This document shows positions 32,629 through 44,064 of a stretch of 64,000 bases of DNA, one piece after another. The DNA lies in the IMG/VR virus record IMGVR_UViG_3300005613_000002, positions 1 through 64,000 of that record, one strand, 5' to 3'. Made by a program: the position numbers and the translations under genes. Numbering within the stretch: the first letter of the stretch is position 1; each line of letters begins with the position of its first letter. The notes beneath the pieces are model-generated. The model had not been told where the DNA came from and did no database searches. It saw nothing but the letters and a program-made list of their open reading frames with translations.

Positions 32629-33075
32629 TTATTTTGATTTATTTTCCAAATAAATCACACCATTCGAACTATCTATTAATGCTTGATGTTCAGATTCAAC
32701 ATAATTACAATAAATAAACATATTATCACCAAACTGTTCAATTTGAAGTTTAAGTGTAACTGTTAAATCGAATAATAATTGTGGATATGAATTAATTAAT
32801 GAAATTGGTGCAACAATTCTCATTTCACATTCATCATTATGCCACTTACATACATCAAATTCACCATTTTCTAAAGCACTTTGAGCATCTTCTTCATTAT
32901 CAAACCAATACCACCCATCTATAGGAAAATCATATGTATCTTTTAATTCTTTACTTAATTCATAATCTCGTGCTATAATAAAATTAGCACCATAAATTAA
33001 ATTAATTCCATCTTCTGTTTTATAAAATCCATCTGTCATAATATTCAATTTAAATGTTATCCAGCTATTGTCCAA
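32629..33075 (-). CDS. Hypothetical protein
   Basis: GFYK...L.YGANF...FPIDGWYWFD; in operon. Confidence 0.6.
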   Translation of the reverse strand: MDNSWITFKLNIMTDGFYKTEDGINLIYGANFIIARDYELSKELKDTYDFPIDGWYWFDNEEDAQSALENGEFDVCKWHNDECEMRIVAPISLINSYPQLLFDLTVTLKLQIEQFGDNMFIYCNYVESEHQALIDSSNGVIYLENKSK

Positions 33076-34151
33076 CCCTTATCTGTTGCAATTTGTCTTT
33101 CAGCAGCAGTTAATAATGCTGCCCCATAATTTCCAGTTATTGTAATTGTTTGTGATGTTACACCTGATGCTAACCCATTAAATATATCCACCAATGCTTC
33201 TTGACCTAATAAACAATTATTATAACTTATACTGATTGATGTCCCACTTAACACACCAGCAGATAATGAGAAATTATAATAAAACATATTTGTAAAACTA
33301 GTACCTCCTGATGTATTTAACATTGGTATTGTTTGTAATGAAGTACAATATTGAAACATCGAATAAAATGTTGTTGCCCCTGATGTATTTAAATATGGTA
33401 TGGTTCTTAATGTTTGGCAATATGTAAACATATTACCAAAATATTGAACATTTGATGTATCTAATAATGGTATTGTTTCTAATGAATTACAATACATAAA
33501 CATATATGTTAAATCAGTACCTTTTGATGTATCTAATGATACTAACTTTTGTAATTTATAACAATAATAAAACATATATTCAAAATCTGAAATATTATTA
33601 GTACCAATAAATTCGAATTGTTCTAATAGACCAGTTTTAGTATCATCATCAGATATTAAAATTTGAGTAAAACCAGTACCTGCCATTCTAATATCTAACC
33701 AACCATTACAATAATCAACAGTATCTTGTTTAACATTTAAATAACAATTTGTTAAAGTTTCACCAGATTGTGGTGTTACAACAACAATTGCCTGTCTATA
33801 TCCTTTTGAGCTTTCAGTAGTTACATCATAATCACCATAATTTAAATAGTCATCATATTGTACACCACTAGCAACATCAGTATCTGACACTAAGGAAGAT
33901 TTATTATAAACTTTTACATTATATGCACCACTAAAATCTAATGTTAAAAAAGTACCATTTTCATAAACAGCATGTAATCCAACAAATATTTCATTTCCTT
34001 CAACTATCGTATAACCAGTTGTAATATCTAACCAATCAGTTGGTCTAGTATATGAATTATCATATATGTCTTGCCAATATTGCTCAGTCCATTCTGGTGT
34101 TGTATCTCCACCACTTCCTATCATTGGTAATTTAAAAGTTCCTATTGCCAT
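33057..34151 (-). CDS. DUF285/BspA-type leucine-rich repeat protein
   Basis: Four to five repeats of (L/D)TS.G..F..MF.YC.SL.TIP.L. Confidence 0.8.
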   Translation of the reverse strand: MAIGTFKLPMIGSGGDTTPEWTEQYWQDIYDNSYTRPTDWLDITTGYTIVEGNEIFVGLHAVYENGTFLTLDFSGAYNVKVYNKSSLVSDTDVASGVQYDDYLNYGDYDVTTESSKGYRQAIVVVTPQSGETLTNCYLNVKQDTVDYCNGWLDIRMAGTGFTQILISDDDTKTGLLEQFEFIGTNNISDFEYMFYYCYKLQKLVSLDTSKGTDLTYMFMYCNSLETIPLLDTSNVQYFGNMFTYCQTLRTIPYLNTSGATTFYSMFQYCTSLQTIPMLNTSGGTSFTNMFYYNFSLSAGVLSGTSISISYNNCLLGQEALVDIFNGLASGVTSQTITITGNYGAALLTAAERQIATDKGWTIAG

Positions 34152-40036: not shown

Positions 40037-41131
40037 TTACATACTAAATTTATCTTGTTTCCTAGCTTTACGTCTTAATTCATTTACTTCTCTAAAAGCA
40101 TTTGGATTAAACGTTTCTTTTTTTACAATCGATACCAAATGATTAAATTCGTTTTCAGTAATAACCTGACCAACATAACCATCATTCTTTAACACATAAC
40201 TTTTTGCTCTTGAAGTACTACTATTCCCCTCAGAATCTAATGTAGCATCAAATGTAAATTCAAGAAGTTCTTGAACTTTTTCATGTACACTTAAAGTAAT
40301 ATTTTCTTTAGTTTTCTTTAATGCTTTTTCCATTAAATCAAGAAAATGTTCACGATTACTTTTTTTCAAGTTATTATATGTATCAGTAAATTCTTGTTTC
40401 GATGTTTTATCTTTCACTTCAGATATAATTGCAAGCGAACCATAACAATCACGAATCATCATATCCCATACTTGTTCGGCATAACTAAACGATGGGAATT
40501 TATCAATAGCAACAATTTCTTCATCAATTAATACTATAATACCAATCAAATTTTTTGGTCTTTCAAAATGAGCAATAAATTGTTCAAGTTTTTCATCATA
40601 CTTTTCGAAATATTTATTCAAATAATTACCAGTACTAGAAACAGTGTCTTTACCCAATTTTTCAATAGCTGGATAAATTCTTGAATAATCACCATTTTCA
40701 CCAATATTATCGAACAACATTTCACGCATACTAACTGGTATCATACGAAATTCTTGAGAATTTCTAAAATGACCTGTTTCAGAACCTTGAACACATCCAG
40801 CATCATGATAAGTAACAGTTTTATTCTTATCAATATAACCACCTTTAATCATTGCATGATTTTGCGCTTTTTGTTTTGTGATAACTGCCATTTGTGTTGG
40901 AACTATCACTTCCTTATTTTCTTTATTAGTCAAATCCATTTGACCATAAGAACTATTACTTGATACCAACGCAGTCAATGGATTAGCAAAACGAGTATCC
41001 AATGAATATTCAGCGTCTGTTGTTAAACAAACAATCTGCATGTTCATAATTGATTGAACAATTATATTTCCATCCACATCCTTAACTGGACGACAACCTT
41101 TTAATAGTTCTGTAAAATCTCTTGTATTCAT
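40037..41131 (-). CDS. ARPP-1 (DUF6569)-like protein
   Basis: Q-N-H...G-C-V-Q-G resembles the ARPP-1 QNR...SCVEQG pattern (from recall); 12-nt gap to the TROVE-like gene. Confidence 0.5.
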   Translation of the reverse strand: MNTRDFTELLKGCRPVKDVDGNIIVQSIMNMQIVCLTTDAEYSLDTRFANPLTALVSSNSSYGQMDLTNKENKEVIVPTQMAVITKQKAQNHAMIKGGYIDKNKTVTYHDAGCVQGSETGHFRNSQEFRMIPVSMREMLFDNIGENGDYSRIYPAIEKLGKDTVSSTGNYLNKYFEKYDEKLEQFIAHFERPKNLIGIIVLIDEEIVAIDKFPSFSYAEQVWDMMIRDCYGSLAIISEVKDKTSKQEFTDTYNNLKKSNREHFLDLMEKALKKTKENITLSVHEKVQELLEFTFDATLDSEGNSSTSRAKSYVLKNDGYVGQVITENEFNHLVSIVKKETFNPNAFREVNELRRKARKQDKFSM

Positions 41132-41143
41132 ATCGCTAAATTT

Positions 41144-42772
41144 TTATGCGTTTACACTTATTTTATTATTTCTCTTAACTGATGATGTTGAAATACTCAA
41201 CACTTGATTTTCCAACCAACGTTTTGTATCAATTTCAAGTAGTCTTGCTTGAATTTGTGGTTGTATTGCTACTGGATTATTAACTGCCATTGTAACAACA
41301 TCTGAACCTAATTTCCTAACATCAGCACCCATTTCAGCACTAGTTATTGGTGAAATTTGATATATTGGGATATTGCTTCCAGATTCATTTCTCCAAATAG
41401 AAATTACCTCATTAGTTAAACCATCATATGAATTTTCATATCCATCAGTTAAGATAAAAATTGCATCATATGGTTTTGTTGCATCTTCTTTCTTCAACAA
41501 CCAAATAAATGTGCTTGCCAAATCAGTAGTCTCACCCTCAGTTTCACAAAAATTAATATTCTTTGTTGACTTAGTTAATACCCTTGCAGTAAAATCTGCA
41601 ATTGCTCTTGGTGTATTTTTTGATTCTACCTTGTTCCCATTCATTGAATTACTTCTATCTACAATAACACCAATATTTTTATAATAGAAATCTTTAATTT
41701 TTTTCTTTTCAGCAAGATTATCAATAGCTATTTTTAATTCTTCTGTCCAACCATTTTCATAACCTGTTTTATATAATGCAAGAAAATCAGTAGCTTTTTC
41801 AACATTTACATGTTTTTCAACACCCAATTTTGCTGTTGATTTAGTTTGACGAACTTGTTGATTAATTGATGTCACTTCAACATTTTTTCTGATTAAAGCC
41901 TTTGTTGCTTCTCTCTGAATTTTTGTTGACCACATTGAATGATATTGTGGGTGTTTCGTGCTTGAAACCAAACCTATCAATATTTCTTCAGGAACTGTTT
42001 TAATTCCATTAATATCGGTTTTTGCTTTTTGATAATCACTTAATAATGGAAAATCAGCCACATTATAATTTAAATTATTATCCATTTTAAATAAAAACAT
42101 CAATAATTTAAATGCACGAAGTGAATCGCCATTAAAATATTTCAAAATTAAATTATTTGCAATAGACATTTCTTTAGCATCACTAAACAAACCATTATTA
42201 ACTGCTTGTTTACTAGCAATTGAAATTAAAATGCTTGTCTTTTTTTGACCATAGACATGTTTTAATATTTCAGCAATTTTATTACGATATTTCAATGAAT
42301 AAAATTCAATATTTGATTGACCCCAAATATATCCAAGTATAATTTTCCTTGTTCTTTCGTTGTTAACTTTTAATTTTTTCAAATCCATAAACAAACGAAG
42401 CACATATGGAATACCATTTTCACCAAGATTATTCAATGCAGTTAGAACTGCTTTATCACAAACCCCATTATCATACCAATCAATTGGATTAACAATATTA
42501 CATGCACCACCTTTTAACGTGTTTTTAAACTCATTTAACAACACTTCAGATATATAACGACCAGTTGCACCCTTTTGAGTTGCAATAATCAATGGTAGCT
42601 CCTTTGAGAGATTATATTGACTATTAATCTGTGCACGTATAGCATTCAATTGTTCATCTCTACTGTGATAGTAAGTGGCACTACTCTTAGCACCAGAAGC
42701 AATTGTTAAGCCGTCTATCAAAGACTGTTTGATAGAACTAAGCATTCTCTGTGTTAATACCAAATTTTCCAT
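41144..42772 (-). CDS. TROVE/Ro60-like protein (helical N-terminal region plus C-terminal vWA domain)
   Basis: vWA MIDAS: VIVDRSNSM, TDLA, ILTDG; about 380-aa helical N-terminal region; size and architecture fit Ro60-like proteins. Confidence 0.65.
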   Translation of the reverse strand: MENLVLTQRMLSSIKQSLIDGLTIASGAKSSATYYHSRDEQLNAIRAQINSQYNLSKELPLIIATQKGATGRYISEVLLNEFKNTLKGGACNIVNPIDWYDNGVCDKAVLTALNNLGENGIPYVLRLFMDLKKLKVNNERTRKIILGYIWGQSNIEFYSLKYRNKIAEILKHVYGQKKTSILISIASKQAVNNGLFSDAKEMSIANNLILKYFNGDSLRAFKLLMFLFKMDNNLNYNVADFPLLSDYQKAKTDINGIKTVPEEILIGLVSSTKHPQYHSMWSTKIQREATKALIRKNVEVTSINQQVRQTKSTAKLGVEKHVNVEKATDFLALYKTGYENGWTEELKIAIDNLAEKKKIKDFYYKNIGVIVDRSNSMNGNKVESKNTPRAIADFTARVLTKSTKNINFCETEGETTDLASTFIWLLKKEDATKPYDAIFILTDGYENSYDGLTNEVISIWRNESGSNIPIYQISPITSAEMGADVRKLGSDVVTMAVNNPVAIQPQIQARLLEIDTKRWLENQVLSISTSSVKRNNKISVNA

Positions 42773-42859
42773 AGTTACATTTTAAACTTTAATTATTAAT
42801 AAAAATAACATTTACGAACAGTATTATACGTATTCGATTAAATAATGTTACAAAAATTC

Positions 42860-42920
42860 AAAAAAAAAAATGAGCAAAAATTTCAACGTAATTAAACATC
42901 AAATTTCCCGCCCATTGCTC
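42860..42920 (-). terminator. Long hairpin plus U11 tract between the ncRNA array and the TROVE-like gene
   Basis: Minus strand GAGCAA...AAAUUUGAUG/CGUUGAAAUUU...UUGCUC then AUUUUUUUUUUU. Confidence 0.55.
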
Positions 42921-42956: not shown

Positions 42957-43047
42957 GGAAAGAAGTGTGATTGTATTTTTTGTACGTTTGTGTCGCCACT
43001 ATCTGGGCGACAAATTTCAATTTACTGTAAACACAATAAGTTCTTCC
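42957..43047 (-). ncRNA. Y-RNA-like element D (conserved stem plus GC hairpin, no tRNA fold)
   Basis: GGAAGAAC.UAUUGUGUUUACAGUAA...; AUUGUGUUU pairs with AAAUACAAU; inner UGUCGCC/GGCGACA hairpin. Confidence 0.6.
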
Positions 43048-43176
43048 ATAAAACAAATTTTTTGAAAAAAATCAATATTTTACTATTGATAAAAACCATT
43101 TTTAACCTACACATCATTTTACTGATGATTCAAATGTTAGGTGGGGTGATGTTTTTATAAACATCCAAAAAACTTT

Positions 43177-43329
43177 GGGAATATTTTTAAAGTATTTGTT
43201 GCTTTTTGTGTGCAAGTTTTAACGACTTGTGACTTTACCGTTTGTCTATATCCCCAATTTTATTTTTTATTGGTGGGGATAGAAGGATTCGAACCTTCAA
43301 TAATTACTGTAAACACTTATAGTTTTCCC
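43177..43329 (-). ncRNA. Y-RNA-like element C: circularly permuted tRNA (T arm-acceptor 3'-CCA-spacer-acceptor 5'-D arm-anticodon arm) inside the conserved stem
   Basis: GAAGG-UUCGAAU-CCUUC-UAUCCCC-ACCA (43298-43271) precedes GGGGAUA-UA-GAC...GUC-A-CAAGU-CGUUAAA-ACUUG (43255-43213). Confidence 0.8.
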
Positions 43330-43467
43330 TTAATATCTTTAACCTATTGAACTGTGTGTTTATGTGAGGCACTACTTGGAATGTAATTTATCAGTTTTAC
43401 TAGCCTTTTCATGTTCATTCAATTTAGGAATCCGTTTCCATTTTGTTTGGATTCTTAGGTCAAATTG

Positions 43468-43602
43468 TGGGGAGAATCGGATTCGAACCGATAATCTATT
43501 GATTTCAACTCAATTGCTTTAACCTATTACTGTAAACACTAATAGTTCTCTTTTAAAGAGTAATGAGATAGTATTATTTGTTTTTGTTTTTGCTATCTCC
43601 CC
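43468..43602 (-). ncRNA. tRNA-like element B with the conserved stem inserted in the D-arm (anticodon-loop triplet UGA)
   Basis: 7-bp GGGGAGA/UCUCCCC acceptor, AUUGA/UCAAU anticodon stem, AUCGG-UUCGAAU-CCGAU T arm; about 62-nt insertion after C11. Confidence 0.75.
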
Positions 43603-43835
43603 ATTTATTAAATCCTGTAATTTTAATTAATACTTTATGTTTCTCTCTTTTCAGTAGCGTACATATCTCGTTAATCCTAAATTACAGAATTATTTTTTTA
43701 AATCTAAGCACCATGCCATTTCATAGGTATTAAAACCGCCAAAATTGGGGGTCTGCTTAAATTTATTTCATTATTTTAAAGAACTTTAAGCCAGTTACGT
43801 TTACATAAAGTAAAGAGGCTTTACTGACTATCATG

Positions 43836-43923
43836 TAGCGGGAGAGGGATTCGAACCCCCGTTAAACCTTATTCAGGACTCCGTGCTTATGAGACAGGTG
43901 AGATACCGCTTCTCCATCCCGCA
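43836..43923 (-). tRNA. tRNA with CAU anticodon (Met or Ile2) and a 20-nt variable arm; no encoded CCA
   Basis: UGCGGGA/UCCCGCU acceptor, GAG/CUC D stem, CUCAUAA loop, GGGGG-UUCGAAU-CCCUC T arm. Confidence 0.75.
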
Positions 43924-43937
43924 ATATATTTTTTATA

Positions 43938-44064
43938 AAAGGATAGTTTATTTGTTATATGTTGTTTTTACAAAGTTGGATTTGAACCAACGGCATACTG
44001 CTTATAAGGCAATCACTCTAACCGACTGAGTTATTTGTTACTGTAATAACAATTAGTTTCCTTT
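43938..44064 (-). ncRNA. Element A: tRNA-Ile(UAU)-like cloverleaf (43967-44040) whose acceptor stem is extended by the conserved stem
   Basis: ACUC/GAGU D stem, AUUGC-CUUAUAA-GCAGU, GUUGG-UUCAAAU-CCAAC; outer AAAGGA/UCCUUU and UUGUUAU/AUAACAA pairs. Confidence 0.8.

What the first reader, a model, noticed from the sequence alone, without database searches (positions are those of the whole stretch)
43938..44064. Element A: tRNA-Ile(UAU) locked inside a Y-like stem
D, anticodon and T arms are canonical, and the acceptor stem is A/U-rich (6 of 7 pairs) with no CCA, extended by the conserved stem. Most bacteria lack tRNA-Ile(UAU) and read AUA with lysidine-modified CAU, while ATA codons are visibly common in this AT-rich phage. 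If released it would boost AUA decoding independently of TilS; if not, it is a tethered decoy.
Basis: partly seen in the sequence, partly recalled or inferred. Interest (0 to 1): 0.65.

Follow-up and report, generated by a model that had tools for sequence, protein, structure and literature searches.

The report
tRNA-shaped Y RNA beside phage Ro60
The "tRNA-Ile(UAU)" is real, but it is best read as a Y-type small RNA that sits beside a very divergent phage Ro60 gene and carries a whole tRNA shape whose anticodon differs from phage to phage, so it is probably a tethered tRNA mimic and not a dedicated AUA decoder.

Summary
A 74-nt cloverleaf with anticodon UAU lies at 44040..43967 on the minus strand (ARAGORN; Rfam tRNA 61.8 bits). 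A two-part stem encloses it, so the whole element spans 44064..43938.

The interpretation changes. The window comes from a complete 321.6-kb, 27% GC jumbo phage. About 1.2 kb downstream on the same strand is a 542-aa protein with no Pfam match. Its predicted fold is Ro60/Rsr over its full length (Z 15.8 to Thermus phage phiLo Ro60) and it has an invariant MIDAS motif.

Element A is the first of four RNAs in the gap that share one closing-stem module. That module is conserved and covaries in more than 50 related phage loci.

The anticodon does not behave like a decoder's. There are 17 different triplets in 44 distinct orthologues: 13 read stop codons, 9 have C33 and 3 have A34. The triplet changes at least as fast as synonymous sites. 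The acceptor helix is A/U-rich and usually 5-6 bp. These phages keep their canonical tRNAs, including a GC-rich tRNA-Ile(UAU) in two relatives, in a separate bank of about 40-60 genes.

Best reading (confidence 0.68): a Ro60-associated Y-like RNA with a complete tRNA as its effector domain. This is a new variant of the YrlA/Yrl kind. AUA decoding is not excluded for this phage (about 0.12). No RNA data exist.

The parts
43938..44064 (-). Element A, whole RNA module (class-A Y-like RNA): closing stem P1/P2 plus a complete tRNA domain
   Evidence: Covariance model R1 scores it 135.3 bits, E 8e-29. It is the only class-A copy in the 321.6-kb genome. It is orthologous to one element per locus in about 50 of 60 related loci.
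44059..44064 (-). P1 5' strand, AAAGGA
   Evidence: Pairs with 43938-43943. Paired in 100% of cells. Compensatory variants are AGAGA/UCUCU, ACAGA/UCUGU and AGGGA/UCCCU.
44053..44058 (-). 5' side of the internal loop with invariant AACU, a candidate protein-contact motif
   Evidence: AAAC and U are invariant in 34 orthologues. AACU is also present in elements B, C and D.
44046..44052 (-). P2 5' strand, UUGUUAU
   Evidence: Pairs with 43952-43958. Paired in 90% of cells. Compensatory variants are UGUUGU/ACAACA and, in L071, GGCGA/UCGCU.
44041..44045 (-). Junction UACAG; CAG is invariant
   Evidence: C, A and G are invariant. The same CAGUAA follows P2 in elements B-D and in all module classes of the relatives.
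43967..44040 (-). tRNA domain: 74 nt, anticodon UAU at 44006..44004, A/U-rich acceptor with an A2.A71 mismatch, A73, no CCA
   Evidence: ARAGORN; Rfam tRNA 61.8 bits; sequence read.
43952..43958 (-). P2 3' strand, AUAACAA
43938..43943 (-). P1 3' strand, UCCUUU, followed by a U/A-rich linker to the next tRNA
   Evidence: The linker ending in AUAUAU before the next tRNA is conserved.
43835..43923 (-). Initiator-like tRNA(CAU), 89 nt, about 14 nt downstream of element A. Its 5' processing probably defines the 3' end of element A (inferred).
   Evidence: ARAGORN and Rfam 44.3 bits. The CAU anticodon, the U1xU72 mismatch and A11:U24 are kept in 46 distinct orthologues.
43468..43602 (-). Element B: Y-like module with a partial tRNA (D-like arm, anticodon-like arm, T arm, GGGGAGA/UCUCCCC acceptor). 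The closing stem is capped as a hairpin.
   Evidence: Shared 27-nt box; Rfam tRNA 28.8 bits for 43476-43531; fold; homologues in relatives.
43177..43332 (-). Element C: YrlA-like order. Closing stem, T arm, closed acceptor hairpin carrying ACCA, D arm, anticodon-like hairpin.
   Evidence: Shared box; the MFE fold reproduces this layout; weak Rfam match to permuted tmRNA at 43247-43298; homologues in relatives.
42957..43048 (-). Element D: the same closing stem around one G+C-rich hairpin, with no tRNA part
   Evidence: Shared box; fold; homologues in relatives.
41144..42772 (-). Divergent Ro60/Rsr orthologue (P0001, 542 aa): helical-repeat ring plus vWA domain with MIDAS residues D372, S374, S376, T442, D443
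   Evidence: AlphaFold2 model with pLDDT 79, pTM 0.73. The top 12 Foldseek PDB hits are all Ro60/Rsr/TROVE. VIA-align gives Z 15.8 to phiLo Ro60 over 400 aa and Z 11.9-14 to Xenopus, human and Deinococcus Ro. MIDAS residues are invariant or nearly so. There is no sequence-level match.
40037..41131 (-). ARPP-1 domain protein, directly downstream of the Ro60-like gene
   Evidence: Pfam PF20208, E 2.9e-15. It follows the Ro60-like gene in 67 related loci.

Best explanation
Element A is a Y-type non-coding RNA and not an ordinary tRNA gene. Its two ends pair into a conserved handle: P1 (6 bp), an asymmetric internal loop with invariant AACU, P2 (7 bp), and a junction with invariant CAG. This phage uses the same handle on four neighbouring RNAs, and its relatives use it on three to six. 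I infer that the handle is the binding site for the Ro60/Rsr-like protein encoded just downstream on the same strand. In class A the handle continues through a short, weak A/U helix (the 'acceptor stem') into a complete tRNA body that can fold into the L shape. That body is the effector part. It presents a tRNA shape, including a normal 7-nt anticodon loop, to some tRNA-binding partner while staying tied to the ribonucleoprotein. The three anticodon bases are not kept for decoding. They are free or under diversifying selection, so 'Ile(UAU)' is this phage's current state of a variable triplet. Biogenesis is also inferred. The array is transcribed as one unit, and the ends of element A are set by processing of neighbouring tRNA-like ends. 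In this window that is RNase P cutting at the 5' end of the initiator-like tRNA(CAU) 14 nt downstream.

Shown here: the cloverleaf, the handle and its covariation, the paralogous array, the Ro60 fold of the neighbouring protein, conserved synteny, and anticodon hypervariability.

Inferred: Ro60 binding, that the RNA stays uncut, the nature of the partner, and the processing route.
For: 1. Ro60 context. P0001 matches only Ro60/Rsr/TROVE structures over its full length and has an invariant MIDAS motif. Element A lies 1.2 kb upstream on the same strand. That meets the criterion of Chen et al. 2014 (PMC4201824): within 4 kb and on the same strand.

2. The handle is conserved. P1 and P2 covary within class A (92.9% of cells paired, 0 of 500 shuffles as high; slid controls 41-57%). 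They also covary across 127 distinct modules of all classes (that alignment is fitted to the model). The flanks are nearly invariant although the neighbouring proteins are only 49-85% identical.

3. Paralogues. The same box occurs four times in the window. It closes a YrlA-like permuted tRNA (element C) and a simple hairpin RNA (element D).

4. The anticodon is not conserved.
- 17 triplets occur in 44 distinct orthologues.
- Parsimony steps on the Ro-protein tree are 13, 14 and 14. These equal the highest value of any column in the element (one T-stem column also has 14). U33 has 4 steps, A37 has 1 and A38 has 3.
- Four-fold sites of the Ro gene average 7.8 steps, and only 4 of 46 reach 13.
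- In pairwise comparisons the anticodon differs at 69% of positions, four-fold sites at 49% and the rest of the element at 27%.
- L026 and L074 differ at 3 of 119 positions outside the anticodon but at 2 of 3 inside it.

5. Features that do not fit decoding.
- 13 of 44 carry stop-reading triplets, 9 have C33 and 3 have A34.
- 'Leu' and 'Ser' anticodons sit on a body with a short variable loop.
- The acceptor helix is mostly 5-6 contiguous bp.
- Some lineages lose the D-loop GG and the T-loop GUUC, and L064 keeps only the T arm. All of these keep the handle.

6. Canonical tRNAs lie elsewhere. The bank of 44 tRNAs at 122.5-159.6 kb has acceptor-stem G+C averaging 0.58 (minimum 0.36), against 0.14 for element A. 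Relatives hold a canonical tRNA-Ile(UAU) in the bank, and in two relatives the bank duplicates the anticodon of element A.

7. Precedent. Phage Ro60 proteins with adjacent Y-like RNAs are known, and bacterial YrlA mimics tRNA (PMC4201824, PMC12135203, PMC7824862).
Against: - No RNA data exist for this phage. Neither the 127-nt species nor its binding to the Ro60-like protein has been observed.
- The handle lacks the motif proposed to bind Ro60 in YrlA and the phiLo Yrl RNAs (GNCGAAN0-1G / CGAA). No Rfam family other than tRNA or tmRNA-like matched on the RNA strand, even at E up to 10.
- The Ro60 assignment rests on a predicted fold of moderate quality (TM about 0.45, rmsd about 6 A) with no sequence-level support.
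- Thermodynamic folding alone prefers a rival hairpin between P2a and the acceptor 5' strand: -21.4 kcal/mol against -16.6.
- In this phage the element could still be cut out. The acceptor is 7 positions long with A73. M. smegmatis YrlA, which has a 7-bp acceptor, is cleaved by RNase P and receives CCA. UAU is missing from this phage's tRNA bank.
Confidence: 0.68

Rival explanations
1. It is a working tRNA gene. The conserved flanks are only a leader-trailer processing or stabilising signal. RNase P and a 3' nuclease release a 74-nt tRNA that receives CCA, is charged by IleRS and reads AUA. The varied anticodons in relatives reflect tRNA remoulding to fit each phage's needs.
For: - The cloverleaf is complete, all tertiary partners are present, and the Rfam score is good.
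- The acceptor is 7 positions long with A73, C4-G69 and U12-A23. By my own knowledge of E. coli tRNA-Ile identity, these are among the IleRS identity elements.
- This phage's bank lacks a UAU tRNA, the phage has no TilS, and ATA makes up 30% of Ile codons.
Against: - Anticodons include 13 of 44 stop-reading triplets, A34 triplets and C33 loops.
- Leu and Ser anticodons sit on a class-I body.
- The acceptor is usually 5-6 bp and its length varies. Its G+C of 14% lies outside the bank's range, and A2.A71 is a mismatch.
- In two relatives the element's anticodon duplicates a bank tRNA, and canonical tRNA-Ile(UAU) genes exist in relatives' banks.
- The bank has an Ile-like tRNA(CAU) that is 76% identical to tRNA-Ile(GAU).
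- The handle covaries and is reused on RNAs that cannot be tRNAs.
Confidence: 0.12
2. It is a decaying tRNA pseudogene, or a chance cloverleaf in A/T-rich intergenic DNA, and has no function.
For: - The acceptor stem is weak.
- The anticodon is unconstrained.
- Some lineages have degenerate D and T loops.
Against: - One copy sits at the same syntenic slot in about 50 of 60 loci and scores 93-140 bits.
- Stems show compensatory changes.
- The flanks, U33, A37 and A38 are much more conserved than synonymous sites.
Confidence: 0.03
3. The handle binds a partner other than the Ro60-like protein, for example the ARPP-1 protein, a host factor or a nuclease. Alternatively it acts in cis as a processing or termination element for the RNA array. 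On this reading the neighbouring Ro60-like gene is a coincidence.
For: - The handle lacks the published Ro60-binding motif.
- An ARPP-1 gene is as tightly linked to the locus as the Ro60-like gene.
- A sigma-70-like promoter and a hairpin followed by a U run separate the RNA array from the Ro60-like gene.
Against: - Tandem tRNA-like RNAs lying upstream of a Ro60 gene on the same strand is the published signature of Y RNAs in more than 250 bacteria and phages.
- Element C reproduces the YrlA layout.
- The linkage holds in every locus examined.
Confidence: 0.12

Closest known systems
YrlA (Y RNA-like A) of Salmonella Typhimurium, Mycobacterium smegmatis and mycobacteriophages (Chen et al. 2014, PMC4201824)
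   Same: - It is a small RNA encoded next to a Ro60/Rsr gene on the same strand.
- Its 5' and 3' ends close a long stem.
- The rest mimics tRNA, with T and D arms and tertiary partners.
- Several Y RNAs occur per locus.
- Element C of this window has the YrlA order: T arm, closed acceptor hairpin, D arm.
   Different: - In YrlA the tRNA-like part is permuted, the acceptor is a closed hairpin, and there is no true anticodon arm.
- Element A is an unpermuted, complete cloverleaf joined to the closing stem through its acceptor helix. It has a normal 7-nt anticodon loop with a hypervariable triplet.
- The proposed Ro-binding motif GNCGAAN0-1G is absent. The conserved motifs here are AACU and GU(G/U)UU(A/U)..CAGUAA.
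Thermus phage phiLo Ro60 with Yrl1 and Yrl2 (PMC12135203)
   Same: - It is a phage-encoded Ro60 with Y-like RNAs just upstream.
- It is the best structural match to P0001: Z 15.8 over 400 aligned residues.
- It is proposed to recruit host PNPase.
   Different: - The phiLo Yrl RNAs are stem-bulge-stem RNAs with a CGAA motif. No complete tRNA is described for them.
- P0001 is only 12-13% identical and is invisible to the Pfam TROVE model.
Deinococcus radiodurans Yrn1
   Same: It can be modelled with a T arm and an 'anticodon arm' with a 5-bp stem.
   Different: Its loop has 6 nt, the D arm is doubtful, and both strands of the metazoan-type Ro-binding helix are retained. Element A has a full canonical cloverleaf and a different handle.
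Canonical tRNA-Ile(UAU), as found in the tRNA banks of related phages G001 and G002
   Same: Same anticodon loop CUUAUAA and the same overall cloverleaf.
   Different: The bank copies have GC-rich 7-bp acceptor stems and no Y-type flanks, and they lie in the tRNA bank. Sequence identity of element A to the tRNAs of its own phage's bank is 66% at most.
Phage tRNAs that replace or evade host tRNAs hit by anticodon nucleases, such as the T5 tRNAs acting against PARIS or retron effectors (own knowledge; context in PMC7824862 and PMC11455837)
   Same: The anticodon loop is the part that evolves, and the setting is a phage with RNA ligases and a large tRNA bank.
   Different: Those are free tRNAs that function in translation. 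Element A is enclosed in a protein-binding handle, and many of its orthologues could not decode.

Membership tests
Functional elongator tRNA-Ile(UAU) | Cloverleaf with canonical D, anticodon and T arms and tertiary-pair partners | tested here: met
   ARAGORN and Rfam 61.8 bits. U8, A14, G15:C48, G18 G19, G26, G46 and U54-A58 were read.
Functional elongator tRNA-Ile(UAU) | Stable 7-bp acceptor stem, kept at 7 bp among orthologues | tested here: not met
   The window copy pairs at 6 of 7 positions with an A2.A71 mismatch and 14% G+C; the bank minimum is 36%. Orthologues mostly have 5-6 contiguous bp, and only 1 of 34 has a clean 7.
Functional elongator tRNA-Ile(UAU) | Anticodon and U33 conserved among orthologues | tested here: not met
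   17 anticodons in 44 distinct orthologues; C33 in 9; stop-reading triplets in 13. The triplet columns equal the highest step count in the element.
Functional elongator tRNA-Ile(UAU) | Released by RNase P and a 3' nuclease, given CCA, charged by IleRS | not testable with these tools
   No RNA runs hold this phage.
Y RNA / Yrl (Ro60-associated non-coding RNA) | Encoded within about 4 kb of a Ro60 orthologue and on the same strand | tested here: met
   Element A lies 1.2 kb upstream of P0001 on the minus strand. Synteny holds in all related loci. The criterion comes from PMC4201824.
Y RNA / Yrl (Ro60-associated non-coding RNA) | 5' and 3' ends pair into a long stem interrupted by an internal loop or bulge | tested here: met
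   P1 (6 bp), internal loop, P2 (7 bp), supported by compensatory changes.
Y RNA / Yrl (Ro60-associated non-coding RNA) | Ro60-contact motif GGUCCGA / GNCGAAN0-1G / CGAA on the 5' strand | tested here: not met
   GNCGAA is absent from the RNA strand of the array. The conserved 5' motifs are AACU and CAGUAA.
Y RNA / Yrl (Ro60-associated non-coding RNA) | Physically bound by Ro60 | not testable with these tools
   Needs immunoprecipitation or a gel shift.
YrlA specifically | Permuted tRNA-like domain: T arm, then closed acceptor stem-loop, then D arm; no anticodon arm | tested here: not met
   Element A is unpermuted and has an anticodon arm. Element C (43177-43332) does show the YrlA order.
Ro60 / Rsr (for the neighbouring protein P0001) | Ring of helical repeats (TROVE) followed by a vWA domain with a MIDAS motif | tested here: met
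   The fold matches Ro60/Rsr chains over residues 16-530, Z 11.9-15.8. The top 12 Foldseek hits are all Ro60. D372, S374, S376 and D443 are invariant.
Ro60 / Rsr (for the neighbouring protein P0001) | Sequence match to the Pfam TROVE model or to solved Ro60 sequences | tested here: not met
   No Pfam, PHROGs, NCBIfam or PDB sequence match, whether with the single sequence or with the profile.

The most novel reading that the evidence does not exclude
Class-A elements are anticodon-programmable tRNA baits carried on a Ro60 particle. The triplet is under diversifying selection because it copies whichever host tRNA the local host's anticodon nuclease, or another tRNA-sensing defence, recognises. 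The phage ribonucleoprotein would then absorb, sense or hand over for repair the attack on translation. This would be a new class of phage counter-defence and would give a Y RNA's tRNA-like domain a function.
Probability: 0.2. Interest if true: 0.9.

Novelty: new variant of a known kind. Interest (0 to 1): 0.68.

Why it matters
Bacterial and phage Y RNAs are known to imitate tRNA, but the purpose of the imitation is an open question. This large clade of jumbo phages (76 loci in IMG/VR) offers an unusually clear case:
- One Y-type RNA carries a whole, unpermuted tRNA.
- Its anticodon is the fastest-changing part, while everything around it is constrained.
- It lies next to other Y-type RNAs that use the same handle with permuted or absent tRNA parts.

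This gives a natural set of variants for asking what the tRNA domain contacts. It also extends Ro60 to a family that sequence models miss, and it links Ro60 to an ARPP-1 protein.

There is a practical point for annotation. tRNA finders will label these elements as tRNA-Ile, tRNA-Asp, suppressor tRNAs and so on. That inflates phage tRNA repertoires and can wrongly suggest stop-codon recoding.

Tried and rejected
- BLASTN of the 1.6-kb gap against 50,697 deposited phage genomes found nothing.
- The search of public sequencing runs found only two DNA runs holding 5% of the words and no RNA run. Read laying was therefore not used, and the transcript ends could not be mapped.
- Pfam, PHROGs, NCBIfam and PDB sequence searches gave nothing meaningful for P0001, whether with the single sequence or with a 20-sequence profile. 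Weak VWA_2 hits appeared in 5 of 20 members. Only the fold comparison resolved it.
- The large all-against-all protein search was not run, because the fold search had settled the protein.
- MFE folding of the 127 nt does not recover the acceptor stem or P2. It pairs P2a with the acceptor 5' strand, because the two helices have nearly the same sequence. I considered a conformational switch and set it aside. The most divergent orthologue, L071, has a G+C-rich P2 that cannot make this alternative pairing.
- The sigma-70 promoter and terminator scan found fewer promoter-like sites than shuffled sequence (4 against 9.7). It gave no start site for element A.
- Gap-filling hypothesis: does the element's anticodon supply what the tRNA bank lacks? 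It holds for this phage (UAU absent) but fails in G001 (GUU) and G003 (CGU), where the bank already has that anticodon. G002 carries a stop-reading UCA.
- tRNA cassette exchange as the cause of the different anticodons was rejected. The D arm, anticodon stem, variable loop and flanks stay homologous across anticodons.
- tmRNA: the only hints were weak Rfam matches, 23.8 bits to the permuted tmRNA model (gathering score 47) within element C and 6.6 bits to tmRNA. The phage has a standard tmRNA elsewhere.
Full report
1. What is in the sequence

ARAGORN finds two tRNA genes in the 64-kb window, both on the minus strand. They are tRNA-Ile(tat) at 43967-44040 and a long tRNA(cat) at 43835-43923. 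Rfam's tRNA model scores them 61.8 and 44.3 bits.

- D arm of 4 bp with a 9-nt loop containing GG.
- Anticodon arm of 5 bp with loop CUUAUAA.
- Variable loop of 5 nt.
- T arm of 5 bp with loop UUCAAAU.
- Every nucleotide needed for the usual tertiary contacts is present.
- The acceptor stem pairs at 6 of 7 positions (five A-U/U-A pairs, one C-G pair, and an A2.A71 mismatch).
- No CCA is encoded.

Two further helices enclose the tRNA. P1 is AAAGGA/UCCUUU and P2 is UUGUUAU/AUAACAA. The reported coordinates 43938-44064 are exact.

2. Where it sits

The window belongs to a complete jumbo phage of 321,624 bp with direct terminal repeats and 27.5% G+C. Element A is the first feature in a 1.45-kb gap without ORFs. 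The gap lies between a DnaB-like helicase gene and a 542-aa ORF.

A 27-nt box, the 5' strand of the handle, occurs four times in this gap. On the transcribed strand it reads roughly RRRAACU-N3-GU(G/U)UUUACAGUAA.

The 542-aa protein (P0001) has no Pfam, PHROGs, NCBIfam or PDB sequence match. Its C-terminal part carries DxSxS...TD, and those residues are invariant among homologues.

An AlphaFold2 model was built from 20 homologues (pLDDT 79, pTM 0.73).
- The top 12 Foldseek hits are all Ro60/Rsr/TROVE structures.
- VIA-align gives Z 15.8 to Thermus phage phiLo Ro60 and Z 11.9-14 to Xenopus, human and Deinococcus Ro.
- Each of these alignments covers about 400 residues spanning model residues 16-530. 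Matches to the vWA domain alone follow at Z about 10.

So the neighbour is a very divergent Ro60/Rsr. An ARPP-1 domain protein follows it directly.

3. Relatives

P0001 has hundreds of homologues in metagenomes and 76 distinct loci in IMG/VR. Many lie on contigs of 300-370 kb. The order helicase, RNA array, Ro60-like gene, ARPP-1 gene is conserved.

A covariance model of element A finds one copy scoring 93-140 bits in about 50 of 60 loci. It also finds the other Y-like modules at 30-47 bits through the shared handle. The window's genome has a single class-A copy.

4. The handle is a real structure

In 34 orthologues the flanks are almost invariant, yet P1 and P2 still show compensatory exchanges.
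- P1: AAGGA/UCCUU changes to AGAGA/UCUCU, ACAGA/UCUGU or AGGGA/UCCCU.
- P2: UGUUAU/AUAACA changes to UGUUGU/ACAACA and, in the most distant member, GGCGA/UCGCU.

Counts on the named structure give 92.9% of cells paired, and 19 of 32 pairs have changes on both sides. None of 500 shuffles reaches these values, and slid controls give 41-57% paired.

Across 127 distinct modules of all classes, P1 alternates between A-U and G-C at several positions while staying 94% paired. That alignment was fitted to the model, so it leans towards the structure.

5. The anticodon is not conserved

ARAGORN on the relatives shows a different anticodon at the syntenic slot in almost every lineage. The model-based alignment gives 17 triplets in 44 distinct sequences:
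- UCA x10
- GUC x7
- UUC x5
- UAU x3
- CAA x3
- UUA x3
- CGU x2
- One each of UUU, UAA, UCU, AUC, CGC, UGA, GUU, CCU, ACA and ACU

Of the 44 sequences, 13 would read stop codons, 9 have C at position 33 and 3 begin with A. The 'Leu' and 'Ser' versions lack the long variable arm.

On a tree of the adjacent Ro60-like proteins the three anticodon columns need 13, 14 and 14 changes. One T-stem column also needs 14; every other column needs fewer. U33 needs 4, A37 needs 1 and A38 needs 3. Four-fold degenerate sites of the Ro60-like gene average 7.8 changes, and only 4 of 46 reach 13.

In pairwise comparisons the triplet differs at 69% of positions, synonymous sites at 49% and the rest of the element at 27%. 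L026 and L074 differ at 3 of 119 positions outside the triplet and at 2 of 3 inside it.

The triplet therefore evolves at least as fast as neutral sites and possibly faster. I cannot separate complete lack of constraint from diversifying selection, because four-fold sites in so A/T-rich a genome are compositionally biased.

The tRNA(CAU) only about 40 nt away serves as an internal control. It keeps its anticodon in all 46 distinct copies.

6. The 'acceptor stem' is a connector

Counting outward from the T stem, most orthologues have 5-6 contiguous pairs and only one has a clean seven. Four lineages draw the invariant CAG into a 5-bp helix. Several lineages lack the D-loop GG and have an altered T loop. 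One keeps only the T arm. All of these keep the handle.

7. Where these phages keep their working tRNAs

The window's phage has a bank of 44 tRNAs and a tmRNA at 122.5-159.6 kb. Acceptor-stem G+C in the bank averages 0.58 with a minimum of 0.36, against 0.14 for element A.

The bank has two tRNA-Ile(GAU) genes and no UAU. It does have a tRNA(CAU) at 151028-151103 that is 76% identical to tRNA-Ile(GAU) and 68% to the Met tRNA. This is a plausible lysidine-type tRNA-Ile2. The phage has no TilS gene.

Findings in the three related complete genomes:

| Relative | Element A anticodon | What the bank holds |
|---|---|---|
| G001 | GUU | tRNA-Asn(GUU) and a canonical GC-rich tRNA-Ile(UAU) |
| G002 | UCA | a canonical GC-rich tRNA-Ile(UAU) |
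| G003 | CGU | tRNA-Thr(CGU) |

The element is therefore not a general gap-filler.

8. The other modules

- Element C (43177-43332) folds into the published YrlA order: closing stem, T arm, a closed acceptor hairpin that carries ACCA, a D arm, and an anticodon-like hairpin.
- Element D (42957-43048) is the handle around a single G+C-rich hairpin.
- Element B (43468-43602) has a D-like arm, an anticodon-like arm, a T arm and a GGGGAGA/UCUCCCC acceptor. Its handle is capped as a hairpin.
- Relatives have three to six modules, including a fifth class.

This arrangement matches the description of bacterial and phage Y RNAs: two or more RNAs next to Ro60, at least one with a tRNA-like domain (PMC4201824; PMC12135203; PMC7824862).

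9. Mechanism proposed

- The handle binds the Ro60-like protein (inferred from linkage and precedent).
- The tRNA body is displayed as a mimic.
- The triplet is free or diversifying.
- The RNA stays intact, or nicked but held together by 13 bp of handle.
- Its 3' end is probably set by RNase P acting on the downstream tRNA(CAU). In relatives where a class-B element ends 6-7 nt upstream, the 5' end is probably set by processing of that element's tRNA-like terminus.

What the mimic engages is unknown. Candidates are host anticodon nucleases, tRNA-modifying or repair enzymes, and PNPase by analogy with the Ro60-Y RNA-PNPase complexes. The phage has two Rnl2-type RNA ligases, one inside the tRNA bank, and no RtcB.

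10. Limits

- No transcript data exist.
- The Ro60 assignment rests on structure prediction.
- The published Ro-binding motif is absent.
- Thermodynamic folding favours a competing hairpin.

Confidence in the Y-RNA reading is 0.68. The rivals are rated as follows: a released AUA decoder 0.12, a handle that serves another partner 0.12, and a pseudogene 0.03.

11. Novelty

Phage Ro60 with Y-like RNAs is a known kind. The following are new here:
- A Ro60 family that sequence models cannot see.
- A handle with different conserved motifs.
- An array of paralogous modules.
- Above all, a Y-type RNA that contains a complete, unpermuted tRNA joined through its acceptor helix, with a hypervariable anticodon.

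I file it as a new variant of a known kind.

Noticed in passing
window 43835-43923 (minus strand): The neighbouring tRNA(CAU) looks like an initiator tRNA: a U1xU72 mismatch, A11:U24 and A73. In this phage it carries an insertion of about 16 nt in the variable region and a weakened anticodon stem. Its sequence and its CAU anticodon are kept in 46 distinct relatives, some of which also have 83-89-nt versions.
   Followed up: partly
window 43468-43602 (minus strand): In element B the 5' GGGGAGAUAG can pair either with the acceptor 3' strand UCUCCCC or with a nearby CUAUCUC. In L018 both partners change together (GGGGAGU/ACUCCCC and GAGUUAG/CUAACUC). This hints at two alternative helices.
   Followed up: partly
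window 43177-43332 (minus strand): Element C is a circularly permuted tRNA in the YrlA order. Its closed acceptor hairpin encodes ACCA after the 3' strand. Rfam gives a weak match to permuted tmRNA (23.8 bits, below the gathering score of 47).
   Followed up: partly
window 42823-42920 (minus strand): After element D comes a hairpin (GAGCAA...UUGCUC) followed by eleven U, and then a sigma-70-like promoter (GTAACA, 17 nt, TATAAT) ahead of the Ro60-like gene. The RNA array and the protein genes may therefore be separate transcription units.
   Followed up: no
window 40037-41131 and 41144-42772 (minus strand): The Ro60-like gene is followed within about 12 nt by an ARPP-1 domain gene in 67 related loci. 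ARPP has been predicted to act on ribose or ADP-ribose moieties (PMC9503650). I found no description of a link between ARPP and Ro60.
   Followed up: partly
G000 outside the window: 122.5-159.6 kb, 270596-271156 and 136029-136472: The phage has a bank of 44 tRNAs and a tmRNA (132007-132367). It also has an amber-suppressor-type tRNA(CUA) at 159544-159617, which is also present in the two relatives' banks. There are two Rnl2-type RNA ligase genes, one of them inside the bank. TAG ends only 13 of 196 long ORFs. No recoding was examined.
   Followed up: no
related loci, class-A elements (for example L074, L061, L032, L038, L079, L056, L033): Stop-reading triplets are over-represented: UCA x10 and UUA x3 of 44 distinct sequences. 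Many loops look like register shifts of U(n)-C-A(m), such as CUCAAAA, CUUCAAA and CUUUCAA. tRNA finders would annotate these as suppressor or selenocysteine tRNAs.
   Followed up: partly
related loci L016, L029, L038, L041, L044, L079; also L064:3317-3410: In some lineages the class-A element has lost the D-loop GG and at the same time changed the T loop (GGUGUCGAAACC). L064 keeps only a T arm inside the same handle.
   Followed up: no
window 33057-34151 (minus strand): A 364-aa protein with DUF285 repeats (a Mycoplasma-type family of unknown function), E 1.8e-15.
   Followed up: no
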